DNA from: Bigelowiella natans CCMP2755
Lineage: Eukaryota; Protista; Cercozoa
Direction of reading: 5' to 3'
NCBI GenBank assembly: GCA_000320545.1
Contig: ADNK01000006.1
Location: 1 to 55,712 of the forward strand
DNA: 55,712 nt
Shown: one piece after another, positions 17,195 through 38,159 of the stretch
Layout of the letters: each line of letters starts with the position of its first letter
Numbering within the stretch: the stretch's first letter is position 1
Program-made: the position numbers and the translations under genes
Notes under the pieces: generated by a model
The model's input: only the letters and a program-made list of their open reading frames with translations
Told to the model about the DNA's origin: nothing
The model's database searches: none

Positions 17195-17694
17195 GGTTCC
17201 ACCAGAGCGCACGAGGCCTCGCTACGTTCTCTCACGAAGACTAGATGGGCCTTTTGATATGCAGGGATGTGGGAATGGGTTTCTTTGCAGATCCAACAGT
17301 TGAACCGGTTCGTACGATCGATCGATCGATTTTGGTGCAACATCGGAATAAGATTCAACTCCATCCGAAATATCTCCAATGAGCAATAATTCACCTAGAT
17401 TCTATAAATGCGACACCACAAAATTGTTGCCTCAATCAATGCCTTTGCTCTATCCCAGTTATCGCTGAAATCATGAGTCTAGGACCAGTAAGATTTTTTT
17501 TTCACGATGTTTTTCGGTGATACTTCCCGTTTCTGATACGGCGAATGCTCCCATATGTGTTTTTCGTTAAACCTCTGACTTGGATGAAAAACTGATCGGA
17601 TAGATTTACCGCGTAAATAACTGAAGTAAAAATGTCTAACTACAAAACTGATCAATCGATGCCTCCCCCGATGACGGACGGCTAAGTAGTTCGC

Positions 17695-18007
17695 ATGGGG
17701 GCGGTAGATTACCGCCGAAGCGGTCAGCGTTGTCTGCCAACGATCCTGCTTCTCATGATAGTGATGGGATTCCTCCTTCCTTCCTCTCCCCTCCAACCCC
17801 GCGAGAGGGTGGTGCCAACATCACTAACGTCGTCGAAACCCTCGCTTTTCGGGTCCTTCTTCTCACGCCGAGGAGAAGGAGGAGGAGGAGGAGGAGGAGG
17901 AGGAGGAGGAGGAGGAGGCATCGTTGAATTTGCCACGGGCATTCTGTAAAACCAACTAACAAAAATTAATAAATGTAGAGGGAATATATTAGCGCGAAAG
18001 AAAAGGA

Positions 18008-18040
<33 letters not shown>

Positions 18041-18417
18041 AAACTGATCTTCATGCAGTGTACAAGGACCGTTGTGTATTTTTTGACCATATATAACAGT
18101 GAAGGTCTTCGTACTCGGCTGTTTGGTACCGAGGATAGAAGTACGGAGGGCGTGAGGTTGCTACCGTCCTCAGACAGAACAAAGCACCGCAGCATGGAAA
18201 ATGGCGAAATGAGGAGAAGGAGCAGCAGTATGATCAACAAGCAGACGCCGCCATTTCAATCGGTGCAACGTGTGTTCGTTGGAGGTTTAGGACCGCATAC
18301 CACCGTGCAGGAAATCAGGACCGCCTTCGAGCCATTTGGGTGAGCATGAGGATCGCATTTAGGGGAAGGTGGAAAACGGTTTCGAGGGAGAAGATCGATA
18401 TGGGGGGTTTATCAGAA

Positions 18418-18493
<76 letters not shown>

Positions 18494-18815
18494 ATATATT
18501 CATATGTAATACTTACGTATATCATGCCTTCTTCTGGTTACTTCTTCCGTATGGTCGTTCTTGCTGACTGTGTGAGAACGTCGGCGGTATGCTTGCAGGC
18601 GTGCGCGTGTGCTTTTGTCCCAAAACGCATCTATCCCTTCAGTGCATGTATAATACTGTGCTGTGCAGGAGAGTTTTCGACGTGCACCTTCCTGGTGCGA
18701 ACACTCAAGATCAGCGAAGCGGGCGTGGTTTTGGCTTTGTGACTCTTGGTGGGATGTCTATACAAGAGCTGAAGAAGAGAGTGCTGGGCAAGGTCATCTC
18801 CTCACAAACCGATGT

Positions 18816-18848
<33 letters not shown>

Positions 18849-19367
18849 TTGATTCTTGTGTACCCGACATTTTTATTCTTAGGGCGCTGTGAGGGTGGGA
18901 ACTCGCTTTGTTGACTGCAAGATAGCAGAGCCCAGTGGAGACTATCAAATTGGTAGTTCTGACGATGGCAACAACCACAGTAGAGGGGGGGAGGAGGCCC
19001 GAAGTTGGTTACGACGGATGGAGAAGACTCGTATGGTTTGCCCACGGTACTAACTAGTAGTAAGTAAGATAATTCGAAGAACTCTACTACCTAGTGGACA
19101 ACTAAGAGGAGGAGGACAATTCCATCTATATTGTATATATACGAAAGCAATTCCATGACGCACAGATATTCGCACACCCACACCTCACATCCTCCTTCAG
19201 GTACTACGGCAACACGGACATGTTGGTAGAGGGGTAATCTCACAGATAATTTGATGATGCACAGTATGACGATGACGCAACAACTATGCAACAATTCACC
19301 ATGTGTTGTTGAGAAACACTCGGCTATGGGGGGGAGGGGGGGAGGATTCCGAGGCAAGAACATGGGG

Positions 19368-19414
<47 letters not shown>

Positions 19415-20879
19415 TTCGCGTTCCAAACAGTGCTCATACGTTGACACCCTTTCCTCGCTCTCCTCCCCCCTCGTGTTTCCGGTGGTGTAGCGGGTTGCTT
19501 ACGGCTGGCAGAAGGGTGTACCAAAGGGACCAAGTCCGCACCGATGGGGTCAGTGACTCTTCCTAATTCATGATGATGATGAGGATGATGATGATGATTT
19601 ATACAAACATGGAGCGTGGTGTTGAACGATCACGCAACCCTTCAGTATACAGTGTGGCCTCTTTCTTTCTTAATGCACGTCGTAGCATGGCAATAATATA
19701 CATAATCTACCAGCTTTGACGTCTGTCTGTTCTAGTATCTATTCGTCCTTCCGACGATGACAACGACGACGACGAAATTAATAGTTTTCTTCAATACGAT
19801 GTCTCTACTAACATACATATCTTTTCAGGGTGTCGGTAAGAAGTTCTACGCACTATCCGAGGAAGAGGCATGGCGCATGGCCTGTGCACTTCCTGACAAA
19901 GTAGCGTACTGCGTGCTCTTGCATGTGCTCCTATTATACACATATATGCCGTTGATTTGGCATTGTTTTTCAACTTAAATAGTGCTAATATTATCATCAT
20001 CACCAGCACCAACATTATGACCATCATCACACAAACCTCCTTCGACTTGCTGTGTGTTAACGCGGTAATCAATGAACGACTTCCCTTCCACCTCCCCCCC
20101 CCCCCCCCCCCCCCCTTAGGAGCGTGACCTCTACGAGACGATCTCTCCTGGTGATTATTACGGAATAATAGAGACGAGGGGCAGGGGCAGAAGAGAGATA
20201 ATTAGAACTTTAAGATATGTGTTATAGAAAGGAATCTTAACACGAATACATACCCACACAAACATCGCTGAAACTCTGGAGAGAGCAACATGTGCAACAT
20301 CTTCTCGGTGTTAGTGTGCCAATGACGGTGTTGGTGATTCTTCTTCTTCTTCTACTTCTTCTTCTTCTTGTTGTTGTTCTCCTTGTTCTTCCTCTTCCCT
20401 CTCTCTCATTTGCCAGGGCTCCCTGTGGCTGCATTCCAAGATGTGGATGGCCACATCACTCCGTTTGCATGTGACGACAAGGACAAGAAGGAGAAGATGC
20501 CCAACATCGGTGAAAATAATAGCTCGATTATTCTCTCCCTTCGGTAAGTTGTTCAGGAAGTAGTAGTCTCGGCCGGTAGAGGGGGGAGGGAGGGGATGCA
20601 CGGGATAATCAATAAACTCTTAAAAATCAAATAAGACGGCATTCATAATGCTACGACAGACAGAGAATCGACCGGCTGTTGCCCCCCCCCTCTGCCTCCT
20701 CCTCCTTCTCATCTTTCCCTTCCTCTTCCTCTTCGTCGTCCTGCTTTCTTATTACCAGGTGGCAGCAGCAACAGCGTGATAGATATCTTCAGTTCATGGC
20801 CCCAGCGGTTGTGCGGTTCTTCGCAGAAAAAGTCGGAGTCAATATCACCCTCCGTGACGTGCTAATTTCAGGTAAAACT

Positions 20880-20951
<72 letters not shown>

Positions 20952-22534
20952 ATATTTGCGTTGTTCCTACACGATCATCATTCCTTTCATCATCATCATC
21001 ATTGTCATCATTGATCATTATATAAACACATTACATTTAACAGATAGCTCTGGATTTGGTTTCAGCTCCCGTGCCGCTTCATTGTCTACCTATTCTCCCT
21101 CTTCTTCTTCTTCTTCTTCTGATCGTCGTCGTCTCCTTCTTTCCGGTGTATATTGGAAACCATCGTTTCACTGGATCATACCAAAGATTAGGTTGTTGTT
21201 GTTGTTGTTGTTTTGGGTTTCTTCGCTAACTCTACATAGTAGCATCTAGCGTATAGAGATATTATGGAATTGACTCTTCTTCCCTCCTCCTCCTCGCTAC
21301 ATACAGATTTAAAAACATAGACGAGCAAAGGCGTTTCTGGCAGAGCTTCAGATCAATATTATCCACCCCTTCCTCTCCCCACTCGCAAAATAGTAGCAGC
21401 AGCCATCACAACAACTTCACCGATGAAAGAAGGCTGATGAGAGAAAGTGACATGACGGGTTTCAGTAAAATGTGGGAAATGGACAACGTCTACACAAGAA
21501 ACAGGTCCTCGGACATGAAGAAGGGGGGGGGGGCAAGGGCGAGCAGTGGGGTTTGCCAGAATACCACTACGCAGTATATTATGCGAAGTATAACGATGAA
21601 TCAAACACGAGGACAAAAATTTGGTGTAAAGTAGTTTGCATACATTATTTATATATCCGTGTGTATTGTATAGTCCACATCATATTATTCATTTATCACT
21701 TAGAGCGTGGCGCATGGCATACAGTGCAAAGCGCACCAACACTCCAAAGTATTTAAACGAGTGGTTTACGGAGAAGAAGAAGGAGGGAGGAGCGTCGGCT
21801 TCCTCTTTGAGTTTCCACCGCCCTCTGGTGAGTGACATGATAGCAGGAGCAGCAGCAGGGAAGAAGAGAGGGGCGAAGAAATCTTAGCTTTTTTGAGATG
21901 GACGGAATTTCCCTTGAATAAAGTGCATAAAATACACCGAGATATATTGATGATAACATGAAAAAATATCATGCCCGATAAAAATGCAAAACATCCCGCA
22001 AGGAAAAAATAACACGAAAATGTATCACAAGACCGATGAGGCAATTATTGTCGTCAACATTATCATCTCGTTGTACTTACTTTTTCTTCTTCTTCTTCTT
22101 CTTAGATTCCATTGGAGCTAGATGGTATAGACAGCAGCAATGGAAGGCTGCGCTACCGTCAAATCCCATTTTCAAAGTAATCATCATAGAATTTGACGAC
22201 GACAGCACAGAGAAAAATACAATAATAATACACGAAATGGCGAATTATGAAGGCTGTTCTTACACTTGAAGTAGTGTCATTGTGAAACTTCGCATACCGC
22301 GCAAACGATCAAGTTGAAATAGACCATCCCACCGTCATTTACTGTTGTATAGATCGATGTGGCAGACGCATTCTGTGCTAAGGGATTATCCTGGAGATGA
22401 ATTCAGCATCGTCAACATGGTCGTCGGAATAGCTAATACAATTGTGTCATCATCATCATCCTCCTCCTCCATCTTGATTTTAGAAGCCTTTCTCTCTCAA
22501 ACCTTCTTCATCTTTTTCTTCCCATTATTTCCAC

Positions 22535-22572
<38 letters not shown>

Positions 22573-23496
22573 AATATAAAAAAATATTTTCTATCTATCC
22601 GCAGACCAAGATCATGAATGAGCGAGGAGGGCTGCTGTCAACCGAAGACGACGACGATGGTGGTGGTCGTTATAGTGAGGCTGAGAAGCGTTTACTACAG
22701 CTCTCTGAGGACGAGATCACGGTAGTAGACGCTCTTTTGTTTCTCTTTCCTTTTCTCTTCATCATCATCATCATCATCGCCGTCGTCGTCGTCATCATCA
22801 TCCTGTACGCATTGATATTTGAAGAAGTGAGCAGCAGCTTGTGTACATGCAAACATGCATACATACAAACGCACTACTCAGACGCATCTTGGCAAGTCGA
22901 TAGGGAGGGTTCTGCGCTGGGCGAAGACGCCACGAATGAAGAGGATGAGGTCATCATCATCTCTCGTCGCGTTGTCGCAATCGCCAATGCTCTCGTGCAT
23001 ATTATACCTCGAAATATTAGAGGAAACAATTACTGCAGCCCAGAAATCTCCTGACAAGCACCACCTACAAAATCAACGAATGATTGATTAATAATGATGA
23101 AGGAGAAGAGGTAAGTCTATCCACCCGATATCAGGTATTACTGGCAGATATATCCGGATGTGCCTTGTGTGAGTGGGAAGCAGCACAAAGGTTCGTCCCT
23201 TCCTCTCTCCCAATCATCATTTTCCTTCTTCAGCTCTGCGAGCTCCGTGAGCAGCTAGGCAACATACTGACTTTTTCGTCTACTTCTCCTCCTTCGATAC
23301 AGTCGGGGGAAATAAGATGCTTCTGCGTGCCTCGGGGAATGGCTCTATACTCATCACCTGTCCGGGGAGAAACGTATATTTGCATGCTTACGCCTGTTTG
23401 TCGAGTGTAGCTCTTGAGAAAGTTCCCCAAAATTCTTTATGAAAATGCTACATACGTGACTCTCTCTCTTTCTCCCCCCCCCACGCACGTACATAT

Positions 23497-23569
<73 letters not shown>

Positions 23570-23935
23570 CACAATATATTTTGAATATACTAAATACACC
23601 TAAAAAGTAATAATATTTACTACACATGAAAGTGCTCATCAATTCGGTTCGCACTGCCTGTACCTGCTTCAATCCGTCCGCTGGAAATGCAAAATATGAG
23701 TCTAAAGGACCTTACCGTGGTAATGTTTTACAACCAAAAATACGCTCTATTTAGTCCATACTGATGGTGTTACATATACCATATTTCACCGGTTTTTTTT
23801 TCCCCTTCGCAGCGCAAGTTTTTCTCCAACGGGAGCAAGCAGGAGTTCCCATTTGCTCTGCTCGAGGATGTCGTACCTGAATCTAAGGAAACAGTCGGTC
23901 AACATTCTCATGGCAGCATGGAAGATATCGGATGA
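17695..23935 (+). CDS. RRM-fused PrimPol-family archaeo-eukaryotic primase-polymerase with C-terminal CHC2 (UL52-like) zinc finger and N-terminal signal-like leader
   Basis: Frame-consistent GT-AG exons. RRM: RVFVGGL, RGFGFVT, VDCKIAEP. AEP: GKKFYALSEEEAW..ERDLYETISPGLPVAAFQDVD (DxD at 20440-20448), KPSFH (SxH at 21163-21171), MDNVYTRNRAWRMAYSAK. Zinc finger: CVSGKQH...ITCPGRNC (exons 23135-23190, 23303-23373, 23633-23719). Last exon 23813-23935. Confidence 0.8.
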
Positions 23936-24623
23936 TCGTATTATAATGTTTATTGAATCGTGAGTATATAATGCAGCTTATTAGCCATGTCAATTAGCTA
24001 GCTAGCATTGCTAGATTGCGCTCGCGGCGCCACATGCATGCTAATAATTACATGATGAGAACTTCAGTGTCATCTGCGTGACACACGTATGTGAGAATGC
24101 AACTCGATAAAAAACGGGGCGGCGGGCTAGCTAAATAGCTATATGATAGCGCAGGATCGGGTTGGATGTCGTCCACGCATGCATGTGCGGTGCGCTGTCT
24201 AGCTAGCTAGCTGAGTCTACATGTGTGGCAGTAATGGCAGCTGCTAGAACAATCAGGTGTGTTCTAGTGTGTCTAGCTAGCTAGGTGTGCCGGTTAGCCG
24301 GGCTAGCGGCGTTTGAGTAATTTAGTGCGCTTAGTGTTGTAATTCGCATGCCAGCATGGCATTATGGCATGCATGGTAGCATGTCTAAATGTACATCTAG
24401 ACATCATCAGATTCGCTTATGGATGCTGCGAAAATTACTGCGCCATAAAATAATTTGTGCGGCGCGCGCGCGTGTCCTGCTGTCATCACGCATGCCTTAT
24501 TCTGAAAAAAATTGTTTTGAATTATGCTAAGACTTCAATAACGATGAAAACGTGTCCGTGCAACACGCCCATGCATTGGCAAACATCAAGTTCGCACAGA
24601 AACTTCAGTACTAGCATACGGAT

Positions 24624-24765: not shown

Positions 24766-26553
24766 TTACTCCATAGCAGCCTTGGAGAGCGCCTGATAAT
24801 CAGGAGTTCCAAACCCACTTGCAGCATCCCATCCTTGGATCGCCTTGAAGCCGTAGCCAGTGCCAGCATCGTTCTTTCCACTCTGAACATCTTGGAAAGC
24901 GCTTGGGTTCTTGTAGATGAAGGGGTTGAGGAATCCCATTGGAGACTTTCCAGCGTTGAGGCGGAGGCCATTCAAAAGAGCAAAAACGCCAGCAACAACA
25001 GGGCAAGATGCGCTCGTGCCTGCAACTCCAGCGAATCGGCCGGAGGTGGCTACGCAGTAAGGAGTCTTTGTGCCTCCAAGTGCGGCAACATCAGGATACG
25101 CACGACCTGTGCGGTTCCAGTAGCTCTGAGGAGGCAGGTCAGCGTCCTTGTTATCGAGGTACGATTGGACTGCGCTCGCTTGATACGAAGGAATGTCGAA
25201 AGTGTTGGAGAATCCTCCTCCACCAGCGCTCCATACGCTCTCGGCTCCGATTGAATCGCCCTCAAAGTTTGTGCCCCCAACAGCAGTGATGTAAGGTGAC
25301 GCAGCAGGGAAGTCTGGATTGAAGTGCCTCTTGCTGAACAAGCCACCGCATCCTTCGCGACCGCACACACCCTGATCACCAGAGGCGAATAGAATGGAAC
25401 GTCCCATAGCACCAAGCTTCATGAAAGCTGTGTTGCAAGAGAACATGTACTCAGTTGAGGTTTGCTGTGCCTCATCATTTCCGTATGAGACTGAATGGAT
25501 GTAAGGAGAGGAATCGTCGCTGGTGATTTGGTTAGCCCACTTCAGAAGAGAGTATTGAGAATTGTAGATCACGGTCAAGGGTACGCTTGGTGCAACGCTA
25601 CGGATGTATTCGATATCAAGCTCTGACTCCACACCAGCACTTGGGCTGTTGCCCCCGACTATCTTGTCCACTTCCACATCACGGTGGCAGCTCTTGCTGA
25701 AGGAGTCGATATCGGATGGCTTGAAGTACTGACCTTGGAACTCTGCAACAGCCATGGTGTTATCAGCGGATGCAGTGAGCTTGAGGTCTTTCTCAGAAGT
25801 AGGGAGCTTGTATCGCTGAGCGAGGACTCCAGGAGTGACGAGGCCCTTGCAACCAGCAGCATCACAATCGTTAGGCCAGTTTCCAGACCCGGTGAGGTTA
25901 TTCAATCCAGAGTCGCGGAATCGTGGGAACTGGTAGAGCTCTCCAACCATTATAACATCCTCAGCAATGTCGTCAGGGAGGGAGTATCTGCTGCTGGCGC
26001 GAAGAATGCGAACGTGCCTGTGGGATTTGTGACGGAAAGCGCTGATTCTAGTTTTGAGAGCGAGCTCAGCAGCCTTGACTGGCATCTCGACCTCGATCAT
26101 ATCTCTGTTTGGTGACACCTAAAATTGCAAATTGAGGAATAAGATTCTGTCATATAGCCAACCAATATTTCGAATGTGAATTTTATACCATGCACGTATT
26201 TTGTAACATAAACCTACCGTAGTTCTGATGGCTCCAGCCTGTGCGAAATGAAGGCGCACGCGCTCGACACGGGCTTTAGGTACATCAAGGAGCTCTGTGA
26301 TCTCGGCAACAGAAAGGTGCTTTCCATACCGTTCGTGTGCAGGCTCTGAGACCTCCCAGAATACCTTCTCCAAAGCGCGGCGGTTGCTCTCATCGACTTT
26401 CACAACTGCGGTTAGAGTCATCATTTCGTGAGCATCTGCACGACCTAAGTTCTCCCATCGAGAGGTAGCGGTATTGTGCAGCGGGACGGTGGATTCCAGA
26501 GCCACACGGCCGAAAGCGGAAGGAAGGAGCAGCAGGAGGAGTTGCAGCGCCAT
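24766..26553 (-). CDS. TPP1: Tripeptidyl-peptidase I / sedolisin (peptidase S53) precursor, 2 exons (26553-26218, 26118-24766)
   Basis: Signal peptide MALQLLLLLLPSAFG; pro-domain; catalytic motifs ESELDIEY, SGD, GTSASCP; C-terminal GWDAASGFGTP; in-frame GT-AG intron 26119-26217. Confidence 0.93.
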
Positions 26554-31763: not shown

Positions 31764-32304
31764 GTCATCGTCAGTTCTGACCATGAAGTCTGTGCCTTAC
31801 CACCAGGAGGTCGTAGACTTTGCACAGAAATTGCTGTGTAAGGTTCACGAGATAATCACCAAAGACGAAGACGAGAAAGGAGAGGATAAAGAAGAGAAGG
31901 AAGAAAAAAGAGAAGGAGAATCAGAAGGAGGACAGCAACTGCGACCAGGGAGCCAGGATAATGCAACCGCTGCCAACAGTACCGCATACTACGGCCTTGC
32001 TGCAGTACACGAACACTCATGTTGCGTGTGCATTGCCAACTACCGACGATACTATGATAGCCGGAGGAGGACGTGGCGCACGTGGATTAACTATGAAAGA
32101 TTCAATCAGCTCTGGCGGCGGTGGAATGAGTCCAAAATCGAGTTCGATGCGGAAGATTACATGCTTGACACACCGAAGTGGGCACAGTTTGGTGCTCCAG
32201 AGAAAGGCTTCGATCCAGCCATGAAACGCCATTACAGGAATAAAGGAAGAAAAAATCAAGTATCTGCAGCAGCTTCAAGCCCTAAGGACAACATGAATGT
32301 CTGA
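27099..32304 (+). CDS. TYW1: tRNA wybutosine-synthesizing protein 1 (flavodoxin plus radical SAM), multi-exon
   Basis: Flavodoxin exons (VMATYDG, FCVYGCGSSVYGENYN); HSGVKLCRWTK; LRGRGGCYKHTFYGIESHRC; MEATPSLACANKCVFCWRHHTNP (CxxxCxxC); STFLVTNAQFP; YVSVDA; PDFIEIKGVTFCG; HEHSCC; YMLDTPKWAQFGAPEKGFDP. Confidence 0.95.
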
Positions 32305-33412
32305 AACTTGTTCAATCATCATTCAAGCTTCAATCGGAAAGTTGTATAGCTATATAGGTGAACGAGGTATTTTATTAGTGCATCGTTGCGCATTTATTTT
32401 GGTGCGCTGTGTGGGGGCGAACACACGAAAAAATCAAAATGCACTGTGATGATGCGCTTGAGCACACTCATGCTTGACATTGCACGTATCGAGATATGCG
32501 CGTGGTGTGGTCGCCACATGAGAAATATCTTCAACGCGCCGCAGATTAGACACTATCTGAGATGCTTGCACGAGTATTATTTAAATCTTACAAGCTAGCT
32601 ATTTTGGTCATTAAAACACAGTTCGTGCGAAAAATGTGATGCATGTGCGTGTCATGTCATCGAGCACATGCCCATTCCAATTATACCACATGTATAGCTA
32701 CACACCTATCTGTATTTCGCAACACTTCGTACACGATGACTTCGACGATGATCATGGCCATGCATGAAGCAAAGTGTTAAGCTTGAAGCCGTGGCTTCGA
32801 TCAGCAATGTTCAATCACGGACATAAAACTTCATTTGGGGTTCATTCTTAGAGCATCTGGGTATCAAAGATTTAGTCACAAAAGATCCATACAAGGCGAA
32901 GTGGAGTGTGAAGATCCAATCGCAAGCCGTTCGGCATCGAACCACAGGAGAAGACTACTTCATAAATATTTGCCGATGCTGTTCGATTTTTTGCGTCAGC
33001 GTCCTCCAGCGACTATTTCCATCCATTTGATCCTTAGCGACAACACGATTCACATAATTTCTCTGTAAAATATCAGGGTTTTCAGTGTTTGCATTCCAGT
33101 ATCTAAGTTTTATTATGTCTAAATTATTTGCGTGTTAATTCAGAACAATATTTCCGGAACAATGACCAGAAGCCTGCGGGTCAAATATGATAAAAATACA
33201 GGATATTTTACGGTTTGCGACAACTAAATTTGGATGTAATTTTCCCTGAAATCTTGAAAAATCCAACAATCTGAATAATACTACCTACCACACCAATTCG
33301 CTACATCGATCACCCCCCCCCTCCTATCCATTCACGTATCCTTCAGGTTTCCACGCTATATCATTCGCAAAGGGATTCTCCCCACAAATAATCATCAATA
33401 GTGAATGATAGA

Positions 33413-34380
33413 ATGAGCTTCATCCTGGACATTATTCACGAGTTCTTGGCCCCCGTTGCCTCACTTGCAGCAGGGGGGTATGCATACATGATGCTAACAG
33501 AAAGCGAGGATGACGTCCATGCAGTCAGAGTGGCGTGTGGAGCCAGTACAGCTGCGGTTGCCCTAGTTTATTTCTTAATTATGATGGTAAAGGGACGCCC
33601 AGGAAACGGGAGTGAAGAAATTATCACGGTCTGGAAAAATGCAGATTGTATTCGTTCATCATGTCTCCTTAAATATGACTGACATTGAGTGATCTCTTGT
33701 TAGATAAGGACGGGGGGGAAAACATATCACACTCCGAAGAGGAAACATGACGCCGACAATGCCCAAAGCAAGCTCATATGGCTTGGTGTCGGGACTGCTT
33801 TTCTTGTCACTATGCACATCAAACTCGGGTGCGTATTATCCTGCATGATAGCATAGCTTCTAGGATTCTAGGAATGGATGCTAATTTGACGCAAAGATAT
33901 AAAACTAAATTATGCTGCTTTATCAGGGTTATTGTTCCTCTAGCTATGCAGGCAGCCCTGCAGCCGATTCTTTTGCTGCAATCTGCCATTTTCAACGTGT
34001 GTGTCCTTAACCGAAGCGCCACGGTAGGTTTACCACTATCTTCTTGCAGAAAGAACTGTGCACGGATTCCCTGATCATAATATTGTACAACAGGGTCATC
34101 TACAGCGACCGTGGGACAATGAGAGCGTTTTTTCGCAGGTCTCCACCGACATGCGCAAAATGAAGAAGCAATTCCAGGATATGCAATCAGAGATGGCGGG
34201 AGAAAAGGTAGCGCTATCTAGCCACATTGTACCTGTCTCTACATAAAGCAAAGCATCTGACCGAAATACAGATGAAAATAATCTTAATCGAGCCGAACCT
34301 TTTCGTCATTCCAGGTATCGCGAAGATTAACGGCAAGCGAGCGGCGAAATCGAAACCGTGTGGCTCGCCGGAAAAGGTAA
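33413..34380 (+). CDS. PHO88/SND3-family ER membrane protein, multi-exon
   Basis: Spliced peptide ...KRKHDADNAQSKLIWLGVGTAFLVTMHIKLGVIVPLAMQAALQPILLLQSAIFNVCVLNRSATGHLQRPW matches the Pho88 pattern MHxxxGxxxPLxxQxxxxP...AxGxLxRP(W/F). Confidence 0.7.
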
Positions 34381-35537
34381 AGCCATTTTACCGAAATGGA
34401 GGAGAAGGAACTTGAGTATTCTATATAGTTTATGCATTAATGACACGTAGAACAAAAAGATAAGCATAATTGACGAAGTTATCACGGGTTTGAAAGCCAT
34501 TAAGATCAACAAAGGGATGAGGCCTAGAAGACTAGGGATAGTTCATGCATGATCTGTAGGTGTTCATTCAAATTCATGCAGCTATTAGTACCATATTTTT
34601 GACCTTCATAAATTTCGATAACGAACTTGTGCATACTAGCATGATGGGTCGTGTCAGACAGAGAGACAACCTGTTAAAATAGCCACATCGTACAGTAGCA
34701 TGTGCTCAGCATGTCAGATATACAGAGTGTCGTGTGCGTGCATCACATGCATGCTGCTGCACGTTTATTCACGCCAATGCGCTAGCTCCCTAAGTGACGA
34801 AGCTGGACAGTGTGTGCACATCATGTCATGATCGTGCGAATTATAGAATCAACTGCACATGCTAGCATGCACGATCGAACGCAGCGGCGACAAGCACCGT
34901 TTGTTTGTTTCACGCATGTTCAAACTGTGGCCGCGCTCGCCACTTTCCATGCGAGAGCATGTGATTCGCACACGCAATGATCAGTGCCAGAGTGCACAGC
35001 TCCATGGCACACAGTGTATGCGTGCATGCCAGGCTCGTGGGGTGCCTAGCTAGCAGCTAGATGCCCGCGCATTCCACGCCCAAAATGAAGTCCATGTACA
35101 GGTCTAGTCATGCCAGAATCGCATGTGCACACATGCTGTGCTGAAAATGTGGTTTAGCAACGCACATCTCTAGCTAGCTAGGTCTCACAGATGCACCAAC
35201 ATGACAACTGCGTTGCATGTCTGTCATTAATCGTCCAAAGCGCAAACAATTGAATGAATTCCTTGCCTTTTCGTTCATTAGATGTGCACAAGCTCCAATT
35301 CTCTCACGCACGTCTTTTGGCGGTTGTCAATGTGCGCACATGCTGCAAAAACTCTCCATTTTCGCGACTGCAATGTCAAGGGCACATCGATCCACCATTT
35401 CGACCTCTGACTTCAGAAATGAAAGAAATCACTGACACCTAGTCGACAGACACCACGCACCTTGGGCGATGTGCGCTAGTTTCGTAGAGTCTTCTGCGAC
35501 ATTGCCGGGCCGGAGGCAAAGGAGCGGAACCAGCTAC

Positions 35538-35903
35538 CTATCGGTGACATGGGGGGACACGGGCGAAAGTCACCTGCGACAAGACGGGGATTGTCGCACC
35601 CCCAAAATGACGGATATCGCAGTGCAAAATGCCCGCGTGCGAGACCACTCTGGCAGTGCAGTGGAGTCCTTTCCAGCGTTTGGATGCTGTGGCGAATTGA
35701 TTCGCATCATTGTGAACCACCATCGGTGCCGCCTCACAAGGCAAACTTAGGAGGACAAAGACAATGATGATAAAAAACAACGCCCAAAGTGTAAACCAAG
35801 CACCTGCATTCTGGCAAAAATCATTCCAAGAGCAAACTATACTACATTTCGGAACCGCAATGGTAATTTGAGGCGACATGAACCTCAAAAACGTTTCAGC
35901 CAT
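35538..35903 (-). CDS. Possible small hypothetical membrane or secreted protein
   Basis: 121-aa ATG ORF with hydrophobic stretch AWFTLWALFFIIIVFVLLSLPCEAA. Non-repetitive and relatively GC-rich, divergent from the SNF2 gene. No recognisable motif. Confidence 0.25.
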   Translation of the reverse strand: MAETFLRFMSPQITIAVPKCSIVCSWNDFCQNAGAWFTLWALFFIIIVFVLLSLPCEAAPMVVHNDANQFATASKRWKGLHCTARVVSHAGILHCDIRHFGGATIPVLSQVTFARVPPCHR

Positions 35904-36089
35904 TTTCAGATACCATCAAATTTAGTTAGAATCGGCTTGGATAATTTCCTAAAATAAATCGGAGGTCGCCTTAGTAATTTCCTAGCAATCTCATTTCGGA
36001 ATCCGACTGCTCGGATGGTCTGACCCTCCCCTCCCACAGGCTCCTGTCTCTTCGCAGGAGCTACGAATCCTTAGACTATACAAGAAGGG

Positions 36090-38159
36090 ATGAGGGGGGG
36101 GGAGATTCGGTTCTTCAACGTGCTGCTGATTCTCTCTATCTTCTTCGCGTGTCGGCCGAGGTCGCTCCCACTCCACCAGTGATATGTGATCCAAGTGTTA
36201 AGTTGAGTTGTTGTTGTTGTCATATATCGGCTCATCAGGGAACCTAGACTTAAGAATGCTGCATTCAAGAATACACAAGGGAGACGACGAACAGGACTAA
36301 GGAGGAAATCGCACATATCGTTTGTACCATCATTCTCCTCGTCGTCACCGATCCAGATGTCGCTCTGGTGTCTACGGGGTGGATGTTTCTCAATGCCAGG
36401 GCTCGACGGCCTTCAGGACGTGTTCCTAGACCGCAGTGGAATTCGACCTCCACAATCTATCGAGAAAGTCAGGGAGAAGATGGAGAGAAAGAAGAAAAGA
36501 AGAGAACGAAAAGGCATGGAGACATCTTTAGAAGAGTGCAAAAGTAGATTCAACCTCTCGACCGACGTCGTAGCTCATATGCGCGGTAAAATACCTGAAG
36601 TAGCGGCTGTAATGACAAAGGACGATGGCAAAGTACTCAGCGCCAGGTTTGCAAAGGCAGCTGAATTAAAGAGGAAGTATGAGCCACCTTCCATCCAATC
36701 ACAACGAACAAGCACAAGGAGGGCACAAGCGCAGGCAGCAGCAGAGGCTAAGGAAATTCTTAGAGGTACTGGTGGACTGCTTGCACCCAGACGTGAAGCA
36801 AAGCAAATCGACAATCTCGTAGAGATGCAGCGTTTCTCATCATCATATGATAGTCACGAGAGTGCGATCGAGAGAAATCCGGAGCTGTTCGGAGTTGAAG
36901 CGCTGCGCTACGTTTGTAGCTGGCCGGGCGTGCTGGTGGAGGGGTTTGAATTGTTCGGAGTTGACAGTGTTGATCTTGGGGATATTGTCACCTTTGATTC
37001 GATTAGTGTTTCCGGGAAAACGGGGAGAGAGGAGAAGCATGTTGTTGCCCAAATTTTCACTGATACAAACAACTCGAAAAAGTCGACGCTTGGCCTCATC
37101 AGCGCTTTCAGGGAGCAAGACCAGGTCCTACTTGAAGTGATGACCAGAAATATGCATCGGGAAGGAGTCGGAGGAGTACCGCTAGGGATTGTCGAAGCGG
37201 TTACTCGCACTCGTATCCTCATCAGAGTGGAATTCTGGGCAGAACCTGCGAAGGCCGAGAAACTTCTCGAGGCGTTAACCGAAAACAAATTGCCAAACAT
37301 ATTTAACAAGTATCGAGACCCCACATCACAAACTGATGACATCGAATCCTTGATGGCGCAGAGGAGAAGTGAGAGTCGTAAGGCTGCCGAGAAGGACGAT
37401 CGGTGCAGGTATGTCCATTCAACCGCCTCGGAGGGTGAAGAAGGCGATAGATACGAGGATGTAGCGGCTCCAGACATGGAGCTCGAGATGGAGACGCTGT
37501 TTGACCGATTCCGCAACATTTCCACTGGCCCCCGTCTTTATGATGCCCAATTTGCCTTTCGCAGTGGTCTCGTTTCCAAGCTCTATGATCATCAAATTGA
37601 TGGTGTGAATTGGATGTTGAAGCGAGAGCGGCCAGATCAACTGCAACAGCCGAATAACCGGCACGATGTTAATAAATGGAAGCTGCCACCTCTCTGGAGC
37701 CGCAAGGGAGCTAAATTTGTCCACTCCCTCTCGCACTACGAGCAGCAGAATAGGCCACTTCACACGTTGGGAGGGCTATTATCTGATGACATGGGTCTGG
37801 GGAAAACCATCCAAACTATTGCTCTTATCGTGGCGAATAGACCGCGTGTAGAAGAACAGGGAGGAGGGGGGGGAGCAGGCAACGACGATCATGACGATGT
37901 TGCCAAACTGCTACTTAAATCTGAGGGAGGAGGAGGTACGGCTAGCAGTAAGAATGAGAAACAAGGTAATTGCTTCAAATACAACAACAACAACAACAAC
38001 AATTAAAGCGAAGGAAGCAATATATTCACGTATAGTTCGTCAGTCACAAAGCAAGTACGTGAGCAGCTACCTATGAGAGATAATACATGAAAACGCGCAG
38101 AAAAGAACATTACAACGAATAGAAGTGATAGAGGCGTAAGAGAGTCGAAAAAGCAACAG

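What the first reader, a model, noticed from the sequence alone, without database searches (positions are those of the whole stretch)
17695..23935. RRM-fused PrimPol with an ER-type signal leader: candidate primase-polymerase for the secondary plastid or nucleomorph
Seen: about 20 short exons hidden among microsatellite introns splice in one continuous frame. They give a hydrophobic leader (CLPTILLLMIVMGFLLPS), a Ser/Arg-rich spacer, a complete RRM (RNP2 VFVGGL, RNP1 RGFGFVTL), an AEP domain with all three catalytic motifs (FQDVD, KPSFH, MDNVYTRNR-AWRMAYSAK) and a C-x5-H...C-x4-C zinc finger. Established: eukaryotic PrimPol has DxE, SxH and hD motifs plus a UL52-like CHC2 finger, and typically no RRM or signal peptide. 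Here motif I is DxD rather than DxE. Inference: this is a divergent PrimPol paralogue imported into the complex plastid or periplastid/nucleomorph, where the RRM may recruit it to ssDNA, RNA or R-loops. The DxD motif could change metal or NTP/dNTP preference. The ORF track does not reveal this gene.
Basis: partly seen in the sequence, partly recalled or inferred. Interest (0 to 1): 0.85.

Follow-up and report, generated by a model that had tools for sequence, protein, structure and literature searches.

The report
RRM-fused divergent PrimPol gene in Bigelowiella
The alga Bigelowiella natans has a real, expressed 21-exon gene that joins an RNA/ssDNA-binding RRM domain to a very divergent PrimPol-type primase-polymerase, and one transcript form adds a signal-peptide-like leader, so it is a testable but unproven candidate for the unidentified primase of the alga's relict second nucleus (nucleomorph) or plastid.

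Summary

**Gene model.** Spliced transcript contigs from three independent studies, plus one JGI transcript contig, show a single mRNA. It runs from the RRM exons through the AEP and zinc-finger exons. The model has 21 exons, all introns GT-AG, CDS 17695-23935, 780 aa.

**Organism.** Bigelowiella natans. The locus is already public as JGI model 84808. That model lacks exon 1 and carries a false 43-aa insert inside motif III.

**Domains.**
- The RRM passes Pfam's threshold.
- The catalytic region has no Pfam or PDB sequence hit. It matches a profile of 16 canonical PrimPols by hhalign (96.8%, E 3e-10) with motifs I-III in register.
- All catalytic residues and the C-H-C-C ligands are kept.
- Motif I is DxD here and in the one orthologue (46% identity, same architecture). 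It is DxE in all 16 canonical sequences.

**Paralogues.** The genome also holds two canonical PrimPol genes (contigs C1946 and C2421), so this is a third, divergent paralogue.

**Leader.** Exon 1 has a basic start, a 15-residue hydrophobic core and a Ser/Thr-rich basic tail. It is spliced in frame in one run's contig. Another run's contig retains intron 1, a short upstream ORF precedes the start codon, and localisation is untested.

The scan's notes hold only this same stretch, not other DNA.

The parts
17632..17685 (+). Upstream ORF (MSNYKTDQSMPPPMTDG*), in frame with the main ATG and ending 9 nt before it. At least its 3' part lies in the 5' UTR.
   Evidence: uATG list. X7 record 7 covers 17660-17841 and runs past the left end.
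17695..17945 (+). Exon 1: start codon, basic n-region, hydrophobic core (aa 14-28, 17734-17778), Ser/Thr-rich basic stretch, poly-Gly from (GAG)16.
   Evidence: In X7's contig the loose end before 18100 reads ...GGCATTCT, which is 17945. X2 record 4 and X7 record 7 cover the exon.
18100..18339 (+). Exon 2: Ser/Arg-rich spacer, then the RRM start (RNP2 VFVGGL from about 18270).
   Evidence: Pfam RRM_1 on the single exon gives E 0.004.
18669..18792 (+). Exon 3: RRM RNP1 (RGFGFVTL) and helix 2.
18883..19046 (+). Exon 4: last RRM strand (to about 18933), then the linker into the PrimPol N-terminal region.
   Evidence: RRM alignments reach residue about 108-116 of P0003.
19201..19233 (+). Exon 5.
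   Evidence: Junctions.
19491..19548 (+). Exon 6.
   Evidence: Junctions.
19829..19900 (+). Exon 7 (KKFYALSEEEAW). It aligns to the RRFxxxxxxFW block of canonical PrimPol.
20120..20150 (+). Exon 8 (ERDLYETISP). It holds the conserved Y-E pair upstream of motif I.
   Evidence: record arithmetic.
20417..20543 (+). Exon 9: motif I, FQDVDG (D-V-D at 20440-20448).
20759..20871 (+). Exon 10.
21044..21191 (+). Exon 11: DSSGFG...YWKPSFH, motif II (S-F-H at 21163-21171), with a Ser-run insert.
   Evidence: L004 903-1050, with one 3-nt indel in the Ser run. The region is masked as a repeat, but the record positions fit a 148-nt exon..
21307..21504 (+). Exon 12: ends in motif III, MDNVYTRN (Asp at 21482-21484).
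21704..21827 (+). Exon 13: R-AWRMAYSAK, the second half of motif III with the nucleotide-binding basic residues.
   Evidence: Junction 21504>21704 in three runs and in L004.
22106..22176 (+). Exon 14.
22353..22419 (+). Exon 15.
22605..22721 (+). Exon 16 (acidic linker).
22882..22949 (+). Exon 17. The intron after it (22950-23134) is retained in part of the transcripts.
   Evidence: the spliced junction and the unspliced contigs 22922-23162 are both present in X1, X2 and X7. L004 retains the intron.
23135..23190 (+). Exon 18: zinc-finger first half, C-x5-H (Cys 23166-23168, His 23184-23186).
23303..23373 (+). Exon 19: ...ILITCPGRN (third ligand, Cys 23359-23361).
23633..23719 (+). Exon 20: begins with the fourth ligand Cys (23633-23635), then SSIRFALPVP.
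   Evidence: Loose end at 23373 reads TGCTCATCAATT....
23813..23935 (+). Exon 21, coding part: acidic C-terminal tail (EFPFALLEDVVPE), stop at 23933-23935. The 3' UTR reaches at least 23971.

Best explanation
This is a nuclear gene of Bigelowiella natans for a 780-aa protein. Its order is: N-terminal leader, Ser/Arg-rich spacer, one canonical RRM, a highly divergent PrimPol-type AEP catalytic domain (DxD, SxH and hD motifs), a UL52-like C-H-C-C zinc finger, and an acidic tail.

Shown:
- The whole protein is encoded on one spliced mRNA.
- The RRM and the PrimPol homology are real.
- Every catalytic and metal-ligand position is kept.
- The same architecture is conserved at 46% identity in a second organism.
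- Two canonical PrimPol genes exist elsewhere in the genome, so this is a third, specialised paralogue.

Inferred mechanism:
- As in human PrimPol, the zinc finger and AEP core start and extend chains on single-stranded template (repriming or primer synthesis).
- The fused RRM adds a second single-strand binding module (ssDNA or RNA) that recruits or holds the enzyme on exposed single strands.
- Two 5' forms exist. The exon 1-spliced form carries a signal-peptide-like core followed by a transit-peptide-like stretch, the format chlorarachniophytes use for plastid, periplastid and nucleomorph import. The intron-1-retaining form would begin downstream and stay in the host cytosol or nucleus.

My odds:
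- one gene, RRM plus PrimPol family: about 0.9
- catalytically active: about 0.6
- leader form really enters the complex plastid: about 0.35
- nucleomorph specifically: about 0.15-0.2
For: One mRNA:
- Contigs from three studies cross all RRM-to-AEP junctions.
- JGI transcript L004 confirms the borders of exons 2-21.
- The frame is continuous over 21 exons.

Identity of the locus:
- The exon-12 peptide finds P0001 at 100% identity. Its cluster mate P0003 is Bigelowiella natans JGI 84808.

RRM.

PrimPol homology:
- hhalign of the two RRM-type sequences against 16 canonical PrimPols gives 96.8%, E 3e-10, 157 columns, motifs I-III in register.
- The B. natans sequence alone gives 94.7%.
- In the MAFFT alignment, D87, S144, K157, S159, H161, V209, Y210, N213, R217 and K223 are invariant. 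C351, H357, C378 and C383 are near-invariant.
- The structure model's best matches are human PrimPol: Foldseek probability 1.0, E 7.5e-4; VIA Z 8.2 over 168-178 residues, ahead of pox and herpes primases and human Pri1.
- Protein-language-model neighbours are AEP_C962R, Herpes_UL52 and PPL4 clusters.
- Negative control: no similarity to the giant-virus-type AEP on C1128 (0.07%).

Orthologue and copy number:
- P0004 has the same architecture and also DxD.
- The gene is single-copy in this genome.
- Canonical paralogues.

Leader:
- n-region net charge +2; 15-residue core with mean hydropathy 2.66; next 31 residues are 32% Ser/Thr with net charge +4.
- The exon 1-exon 2 splice is seen in X7.

Context from papers:
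- Bipartite leaders are required for plastid/PPC import (PMC3542566), and a signal peptide is required for nucleomorph targeting (PMC6411479).
- The nucleomorph genome lacks DNA polymerase genes.
- Four imported nucleomorph replication proteins are known. That paper names no primase (PMC5635652).
Against: Weak points in the homology evidence:
- No Pfam family hits the catalytic or zinc-finger part.
- phmmer and a 2-sequence HMM find no PrimPol in the PDB.
- tblastn of canonical PrimPols on the window is not significant.
- The zinc finger alone is not significant by hhalign (1.3%). Its homology rests on position and ligand pattern.
- The structure model is mediocre (mean pLDDT 57). It was built from an alignment that contains canonical PrimPols, so the fold match is partly circular.

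Weak points in the targeting evidence:
- Exon 1 depth is zero in X1 and about 40% of the gene body in X2 and X7.
- X2's main contig retains intron 1.
- An upstream ORF ends 9 nt before the ATG.
- No good (-3,-1) cleavage site is obvious by eye.
- The orthologue's contig is 5'-truncated and shows no hydrophobic core in the part available.

No activity or localisation data exist.
Confidence: 0.7

Rival explanations
1. Same enzyme, but it works in the host nucleus (or mitochondrion) as an extra damage-tolerance or repriming PrimPol. On this view the exon 1 leader is a minor or untranslated 5' variant with no targeting role.
For: - The public JGI model starts at MENGEM inside exon 2.
- X2's main contig retains intron 1, and X1 shows no exon 1 coverage.
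- An upstream ORF sits directly before the exon 1 ATG.
- The orthologue's available N-terminus has no hydrophobic core.
- In animals PrimPol is described as working in both nuclear and mitochondrial DNA replication (PMC4027207 abstract).
Against: - The exon 1-exon 2 junction is in frame and present in a main contig (X7).
- The leader has the n-region, h-region and Ser/Thr-rich basic layout used for complex-plastid import.
- Two canonical PrimPols already exist for the standard roles.
Confidence: 0.4
2. The RRM directs the enzyme to RNA rather than DNA. It would then be an RNA-primed or RNA-templated polymerase, for example acting at R-loops or in a small-RNA pathway, not a DNA replication primase.
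For: - The RRM is of hnRNP A1/Musashi type with intact RNP1 and RNP2 aromatic residues.
- Earlier scan notes report other AEP fusions in this genome with RNA-pathway partners, namely Dicer-like proteins (untested here).
Against: - hnRNP-type RRMs are also reported to bind ssDNA (from my own knowledge, not tested here).
- The UL52-type zinc finger and the PrimPol core are DNA-template devices in every characterised member.
- No data address substrate choice.
Confidence: 0.1
3. The catalytic domain is a domesticated giant-virus primase-polymerase, not a descendant of cellular PrimPol.
For: - The nearest language-model clusters are mostly Nucleocytoviricota AEP_C962R/PPL4 proteins.
- The genome carries viral-type AEPs.
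- The nucleomorph-targeted POLD is virus-like (PMC5635652).
Against: - The gene has 20 spliceosomal introns and an orthologue with the same architecture.
- No viral contig encodes a relative.
- There is no similarity to the viral-type AEP on C1128.
- The best profile and structure matches are cellular PrimPol, ahead of pox, herpes and ASFV enzymes.
Confidence: 0.07
4. It is a catalytically dead, fast-evolving PrimPol relic kept as an RRM-containing nucleic-acid-binding scaffold.
For: - The divergence is extreme: no Pfam hit and no sequence-level PDB hit.
- There are long low-complexity inserts.
- Motif II Arg is replaced, giving SFH instead of SRH.
Against: - Both motif I acids, motif II Ser and His, motif III Asp, the YTRNR..R..K block and all four zinc ligands are conserved between two sequences only 46% identical. 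That pattern indicates selection on catalysis.
Confidence: 0.1

Closest known systems
Eukaryotic PrimPol (human PRIMPOL/CCDC111; PDB 5L2X, 7JK1), in the NCLDV-herpesvirus clade of archaeo-eukaryotic primases
   Same: - The order is AEP core followed by a UL52-like C-H-C-C zinc finger and an acidic tail.
- Motifs I, II and III and the YTRNR..R..K nucleotide-binding block are in register.
- It is the best structural match.
   Different: - It has an N-terminal RRM and a leader.
- Motif I is DxD, not DxE; motif II is SFH, not SRH.
- The zinc-finger spacing is C-x5-H instead of C-x6-H, and CPGRNC replaces C[YH]DP[DE]C.
- It has long Ser-rich inserts.
- It is too divergent for Pfam PF03121 or phmmer.
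The two canonical PrimPol genes of the same genome: G000:C1946:19723-22473 (a single 917-aa open frame) and a multi-exon gene on C2421, minus strand
   Same: - Same family and same genome.
- Both have motifs I-III, and both have the zinc finger.
   Different: - The canonical copies have YLDVE/YFDLEF (DxE), FSRH, CxxxGRxHKSN...C[YH]DPDC and no RRM.
- C1946 passes PF03121 (37.4 bits). Its best hits are green-algal and plant PrimPols.
- The window gene shares no significant tblastn similarity with them.
Trypanosomatid PrimPol-like proteins PPL1/PPL2 and the kinetoplast primases PRI1/PRI2
   Same: They are lineage-specific extra AEP paralogues of the same clade. Some serve an organelle genome (PMC4538821).
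   Different: In that literature 'RRM' means the RRM-like fold of the AEP core itself, not a fused RNP-type RRM. No sequence relationship was tested here.
Nucleus-encoded, nucleomorph-targeted replication proteins of B. natans (virus-like POLD, POLH, RFC1, RPA1)
   Same: They are nuclear genes for DNA-replication proteins, and import needs an N-terminal signal peptide (PMC5635652 and PMC6411479).
   Different: Those four were localised by GFP. This protein has not been localised, and its leader is present in only some transcript contigs.

Membership tests
PrimPol / NCLDV-herpesvirus clade of archaeo-eukaryotic primases | AEP motif I, hhhDhD/E (metal ligands) | tested here: met
   AAFQDVDG at 20431-20451 aligns to LYFDLEF of 16 canonical PrimPols. 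The first Asp is invariant and the second acid is Asp instead of Glu. Definition from PMC4538821.
PrimPol / NCLDV-herpesvirus clade of archaeo-eukaryotic primases | AEP motif II, sxH (nucleotide binding) | tested here: met
   K-P-S-F-H. The K, S and H columns are invariant in the 18-sequence alignment.
PrimPol / NCLDV-herpesvirus clade of archaeo-eukaryotic primases | AEP motif III, hD, followed by VYTRNRxFRxxxSxK | tested here: met
   EMDNVYTRNRAWRMAYSAK across exons 12 and 13. V, Y, N, R and K are invariant columns. The junction is confirmed by transcripts.
PrimPol / NCLDV-herpesvirus clade of archaeo-eukaryotic primases | UL52-like zinc finger (C-H-C-C) C-terminal to the AEP core | tested here: inconclusive
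   All four ligands are present and aligned (near-invariant columns C351, H357, C378, C383). However, Pfam PF03121 gives no hit, and hhalign of this part alone is in register but not significant (1.3%).
PrimPol / NCLDV-herpesvirus clade of archaeo-eukaryotic primases | Statistically supported homology of the catalytic domain to family members | tested here: met
   Profile-profile 96.8%, E 3e-10. Single sequence against the profile 94.7%. Negative control 0.07%. Sequence-only searches fail.
PrimPol / NCLDV-herpesvirus clade of archaeo-eukaryotic primases | AEP fold | tested here: inconclusive
   The model (mean pLDDT 57, core 70-84) matches human PrimPol best (Foldseek probability 1.0; VIA Z 8.2, rmsd 5.5 A, 168 residues). 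The alignment used for folding contains PrimPols, and a model from the two sequences alone failed at pLDDT 35.
PrimPol / NCLDV-herpesvirus clade of archaeo-eukaryotic primases | DNA-dependent primase and polymerase activity | not testable with these tools
   Needs recombinant protein.
RRM_1 (RNP-type RNA recognition motif, PF00076) | Pfam score above the gathering threshold, with RNP2 and RNP1 motifs | tested here: met
   26.0 bits against a 20.7 cut-off on P0003, which is identical to window exons 2-4. The orthologue scores 51.9 bits. RNP2 is VFVGGL and RNP1 is RGFGFVTL. PDB hits to hnRNP A1 and Musashi at E 3e-9 span about 85 residues.
Chlorarachniophyte bipartite targeting sequence (signal peptide plus transit-peptide-like region) | N-terminal hydrophobic signal peptide followed by a transit-peptide-like stretch | tested here: inconclusive
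   Composition fits: n-region +2; 15-residue core at hydropathy 2.66; then 32% Ser/Thr with net +4. No signal-peptide or transit-peptide predictor was available, and the cleavage site is unclear.
Chlorarachniophyte bipartite targeting sequence (signal peptide plus transit-peptide-like region) | Leader present on the translated mRNA and conserved in orthologues | tested here: inconclusive
   The exon 1-exon 2 splice is seen in one of three runs, and intron 1 is retained in another. An upstream ORF precedes the ATG. The orthologue contig is 5'-truncated.
Chlorarachniophyte bipartite targeting sequence (signal peptide plus transit-peptide-like region) | Localisation to plastid, PPC or nucleomorph | not testable with these tools
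   Needs GFP fusion or proteomics. The supplements of the two relevant papers are not held.

The most novel reading that the evidence does not exclude
The leader-bearing isoform is imported across the outer membranes of the complex plastid and acts as the primase of the nucleomorph. The nucleomorph's known imported replication set (virus-like POLD, POLH, RFC1, RPA1) includes no Pol alpha-primase. On this reading the RRM would stand in for partner-mediated recruitment to ssDNA, and alternative 5' splicing would split the enzyme between host and endosymbiont compartments.
Probability: 0.15. Interest if true: 0.8.

Novelty: new variant of a known kind. Interest (0 to 1): 0.55.

Why it matters
- **An open question becomes testable.** Nucleomorph and complex-plastid genomes must be primed by imported enzymes. 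For B. natans, four nucleomorph replication proteins have been localised, but no primase has been named (PMC5635652). A PrimPol-type enzyme with an import-style leader gives a concrete candidate. It can be tested with the established GFP system in Amorphochlora.
- **A natural fusion for the primase-polymerase field.** This joins an RNP-type RRM to PrimPol and carries DxD/SFH motif variants. It offers a natural experiment on how an added single-strand binding module changes recruitment and primase or polymerase behaviour.
- **Annotation.** A public gene model labelled only by its RRM hides a third PrimPol-family gene. The model error inside motif III helps explain why it was missed.

Tried and rejected
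- **Pfam on ten single exons:** only a weak RRM_1 hit.
- **Pfam on the catalytic and zinc-finger parts** of both transcripts: nothing at E<=10.
- **phmmer of the orthologue's catalytic part, and a 2-sequence HMM, against PDB sequences:** no PrimPol.
- **Word-indexed searches of 5.8 billion proteins** with the public protein and with the 2-sequence alignment: only the same two proteins.
- **Full HMMER scan of 1.84 billion representatives** with exon 12: the gene's own cluster plus one low-complexity false hit.
- **AlphaFold on the 2-sequence alignment:** pLDDT 35, unusable.
- **Scans of viral and metagenome contigs** for relatives: none.
- **Raw RNA run X21:** about 10 reads, no junction information.
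- **Supplements of two B. natans papers**, searched for JGI 84808: not held. PMC2722280 is not held.
- **N-termini of the two canonical PrimPol genes**, to see whether they carry leaders: nothing interpretable without transcripts.
- **Giant-virus origin:** rejected as the main reading.
- **Two separate genes:** rejected.
- Exons were searched by reference, and the public records that tools returned (P0003, L004, L005) stood in for the joined protein.

Full report
**What is there**

The region 17695-23935 on the + strand contains many short open segments separated by microsatellite-rich spacers. I tested the proposed splicing with public sequencing runs.

- Twenty runs of one organism hold about 30% of the sampled words of the stretch. 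That is the share expected if only exons are present.
- I laid contigs of three runs from three studies on 17660-23659. In each run a single contig of 1757-1845 nt skips GT..AG introns at 18339>18669, 18792>18883, 19046>19201, 19233>19491, 19548>19829, 20543>20759, 21504>21704, 22176>22353, 22419>22605 and 22721>22882.
- Further contigs cross 22949>23135 and 23190>23303. After 23373 they continue with letters that match 23633 onward.
- These contigs therefore derive from RNA, and the RRM exons and AEP exons lie on one molecule.
- An independent JGI transcript contig (L004) aligns at about 100% identity to every exon from 18157 to 23971. It fixes the borders that one search did not list (exons 8, 11, 20 and 21).

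**Frame check and how the joined model was handled**

I translated the exons one at a time, carrying only the split-codon bases across each junction. This gives 21 exons, 20 GT-AG introns of 90-329 nt, no internal stop, and 2343 nt or 780 aa.

Exons were searched by reference. For whole-protein work I used the records the tools themselves returned.

**Whose gene it is**

- A full HMMER scan with the exon-12 peptide found one real cluster.
- Its members are P0001 (the product of L004) and P0003. P0003 is EukProt Bigelowiella natans P000128, which is JGI Bigna1 model 84808.
- The public model starts inside exon 2, so it lacks exon 1.
- It also reads 43 residues of intron 12 into the protein, exactly between YTRNR and AWRMAY of motif III (compared).

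**Domains**

*RRM.*
- RRM_1 passes Pfam's cut-off on P0003 (26.0 against 20.7 bits).
- PDB chains of hnRNP A1, A2/B1, Musashi and hnRNP D match at E about 3e-9 over roughly 85 residues.
- RNP2 (VFVGGL) and RNP1 (RGFGFVTL) are intact.

*Catalytic region, sequence-level searches.*
- It has no Pfam hit and no PDB hit by phmmer or by a 2-sequence HMM.
- In 5.8 billion proteins only one relative was found. This is P0004, from an unnamed JGI transcriptome. It is 46% identical and has the same RRM, AEP and finger order.

*Catalytic region, profile-level test.* To test the PrimPol claim I needed canonical sequences by reference.
- A Pfam PF03121 search of the alga's own genome found a 917-aa open frame on contig C1946.
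- It carries textbook PrimPol motifs: YLDVE, DSSNDEKFSRH, VYNRNHCFRLY and CGNIGRVHKSN...CYDPDC.
- Its relatives are PrimPols of green algae and plants, all annotated with PF03121 only.
- A profile of 16 such sequences matches the profile of the two RRM-type sequences at 96.8%, E 3e-10, over 157 columns with motifs I, II and III in register.
- The B. natans sequence alone gives 94.7%.
- As a negative control, the giant-virus-type AEP on contig C1128 gives 0.07%.
- A plain MAFFT alignment of all 18 sequences leaves the following invariant: the motif I Asp, DSS, K-x-S-x-H, and V-Y-x-x-N...R...K. The four zinc ligands are nearly invariant.

*Structure.*
- A model built on that alignment is of middling quality: mean pLDDT 57, with the core at 70-84.
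- Its ten best Foldseek matches are all human PrimPol (probability 1.0, E 7.5e-4).
- VIA-align gives Z 8.2 for human PrimPol. That is ahead of monkeypox E5 (6.7), herpes UL52 (6.4), vaccinia D5 (5.5), human Pri1 (5.2) and ASFV PrimPol (4.6).
- Because the alignment contains PrimPols, this shows compatibility with the fold, not independent proof. The model from the two sequences alone failed.

*Zinc finger.* Taken alone it aligns in register but is not significant.

**How it differs from canonical PrimPol** (all)

| Feature | This gene and its orthologue | 16 canonical PrimPols |
|---|---|---|
| Motif I | DxD | DxE |
| Motif II | SFH | SRH |
| Cys-His spacing | x5 | x6 |
| Second half of the finger | CPGR[NK]C | C[YH]DP[DE]C |

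DxD is the commoner form across AEPs in general (hhhDhD/E; PMC4538821). I therefore would not read much into it without biochemistry.

**Paralogues**

- The orthologue's catalytic region matches only this locus in the genome.
- Besides C1946, a second canonical PrimPol sits on the minus strand of contig C2421. It is multi-exon and has YFDLEF, DSSTEDKFSRH, VYTRNRCFRM and CHDPDC.
- B. natans therefore has three PrimPol-family genes, and the window holds the divergent one.

**The leader**

- Exon 1 encodes MGAVDYRRSGQR (net charge +2).
- A 15-residue core follows, LPTILLLMIVMGFLL, with mean hydropathy 2.66.
- Next come 31 residues that are 32% Ser/Thr with net charge +4, and then a poly-Gly run.
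- This is the gross layout of a chlorarachniophyte bipartite leader (PMC3542566; PMC6523293). A signal peptide is considered obligatory for nucleomorph proteins (PMC6411479).

Support from transcripts is mixed.
- X7's main contig carries 51 nt of exon 1 spliced in frame to 18100.
- X2's main contig runs unspliced into intron 1.
- X1's contig stops at 18100. Exon 1 depth is zero in X1 and about 40% of the gene body in X2 and X7.
- An upstream ORF ends 9 nt before the ATG.
- The orthologue's contig is open at its 5' end and shows only a basic Ser-rich stretch.
- No predictor or localisation test was available.

I put import into the complex plastid at about one in three, and the nucleomorph specifically at about 0.15-0.2.

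**Why the targeting question is worth asking**

- The nucleomorph genome encodes no DNA polymerases.
- Four nucleus-encoded replication proteins have been shown by GFP to go to the nucleomorph: a virus-like POLD, POLH, RFC1 and RPA1. The paper that shows this never mentions a primase (PMC5635652).
- No paper in the library combines Bigelowiella with PrimPol.
- Papers combining PrimPol with 'RRM domain' concern other proteins, or the RRM-like fold of the AEP core.
- An earlier scan note points to a Toprim-type primase in this genome as another organellar candidate. I did not test it.

**Verdict**

The gene is a real, expressed fusion of an RRM with a divergent but catalytically intact-looking PrimPol. 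It is a new variant of a known kind that is hidden in a flawed public model. The targeting claim remains a reasonable, testable hypothesis and is not a finding.

Noticed in passing
G000:C1946:19723-22473 (L012:2724-5474): Canonical PrimPol of B. natans as one uninterrupted 917-aa open frame. A Cys/His-rich block in its N-terminal extension looks like a MYND finger by eye. Its best database relatives are green-algal and plant PrimPols, which hints at endosymbiont origin. No signal peptide is visible in the open frame.
   Followed up: partly
G000:C2421, minus strand, about 31780-36800 (L013, L014): A second canonical, multi-exon PrimPol gene with motifs YFDLEF, DSSTEDKFSRH, VYTRNRCFRM, CxxLGREHKSN and CHDPDC. 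Its 5' exons were not resolved.
   Followed up: partly
window 21505-21703: The public JGI model 84808 (P0003) reads 43 residues of intron 12 into the protein, splitting motif III, and it starts inside exon 2. Transcripts from four sources use the 21504>21704 junction.
   Followed up: yes
window 22950-23134: Intron 17 is retained in separate contigs of all three runs and in the JGI transcript. That form ends the protein before the zinc finger (P0001, 587 aa). By analogy with human PrimPol, whose finger is essential for primase activity (PMC4027207 abstract), it would lack primase activity.
   Followed up: partly
window 17632-17685: A short upstream ORF lies in frame with, and ends 9 nt before, the exon 1 start codon. 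It could lower or regulate translation of the leader-bearing form.
   Followed up: no
window 17870-17918 and 21090-21120: Coding microsatellites: (GAG)16 gives a 14-residue Gly run in the leader. The Ser run in exon 11 differs by one codon between the window and transcript L004, and there is one further amino-acid difference (G>D), so strains vary.
   Followed up: partly
window 24766-26118, minus strand: A 450-aa open frame directly downstream on the other strand. By eye it resembles a sedolisin/S53-type serine peptidase. No search was run on it.
   Followed up: no
G000:C1128:56614-58530 (L006:718-2634): A 639-aa open frame with weak hits to the giant-virus AEP_C962R family (33.5 bits summed). 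It shows no similarity to the window's gene or to canonical PrimPol by hhalign. It may be the virus-type AEP that earlier notes describe.
   Followed up: partly
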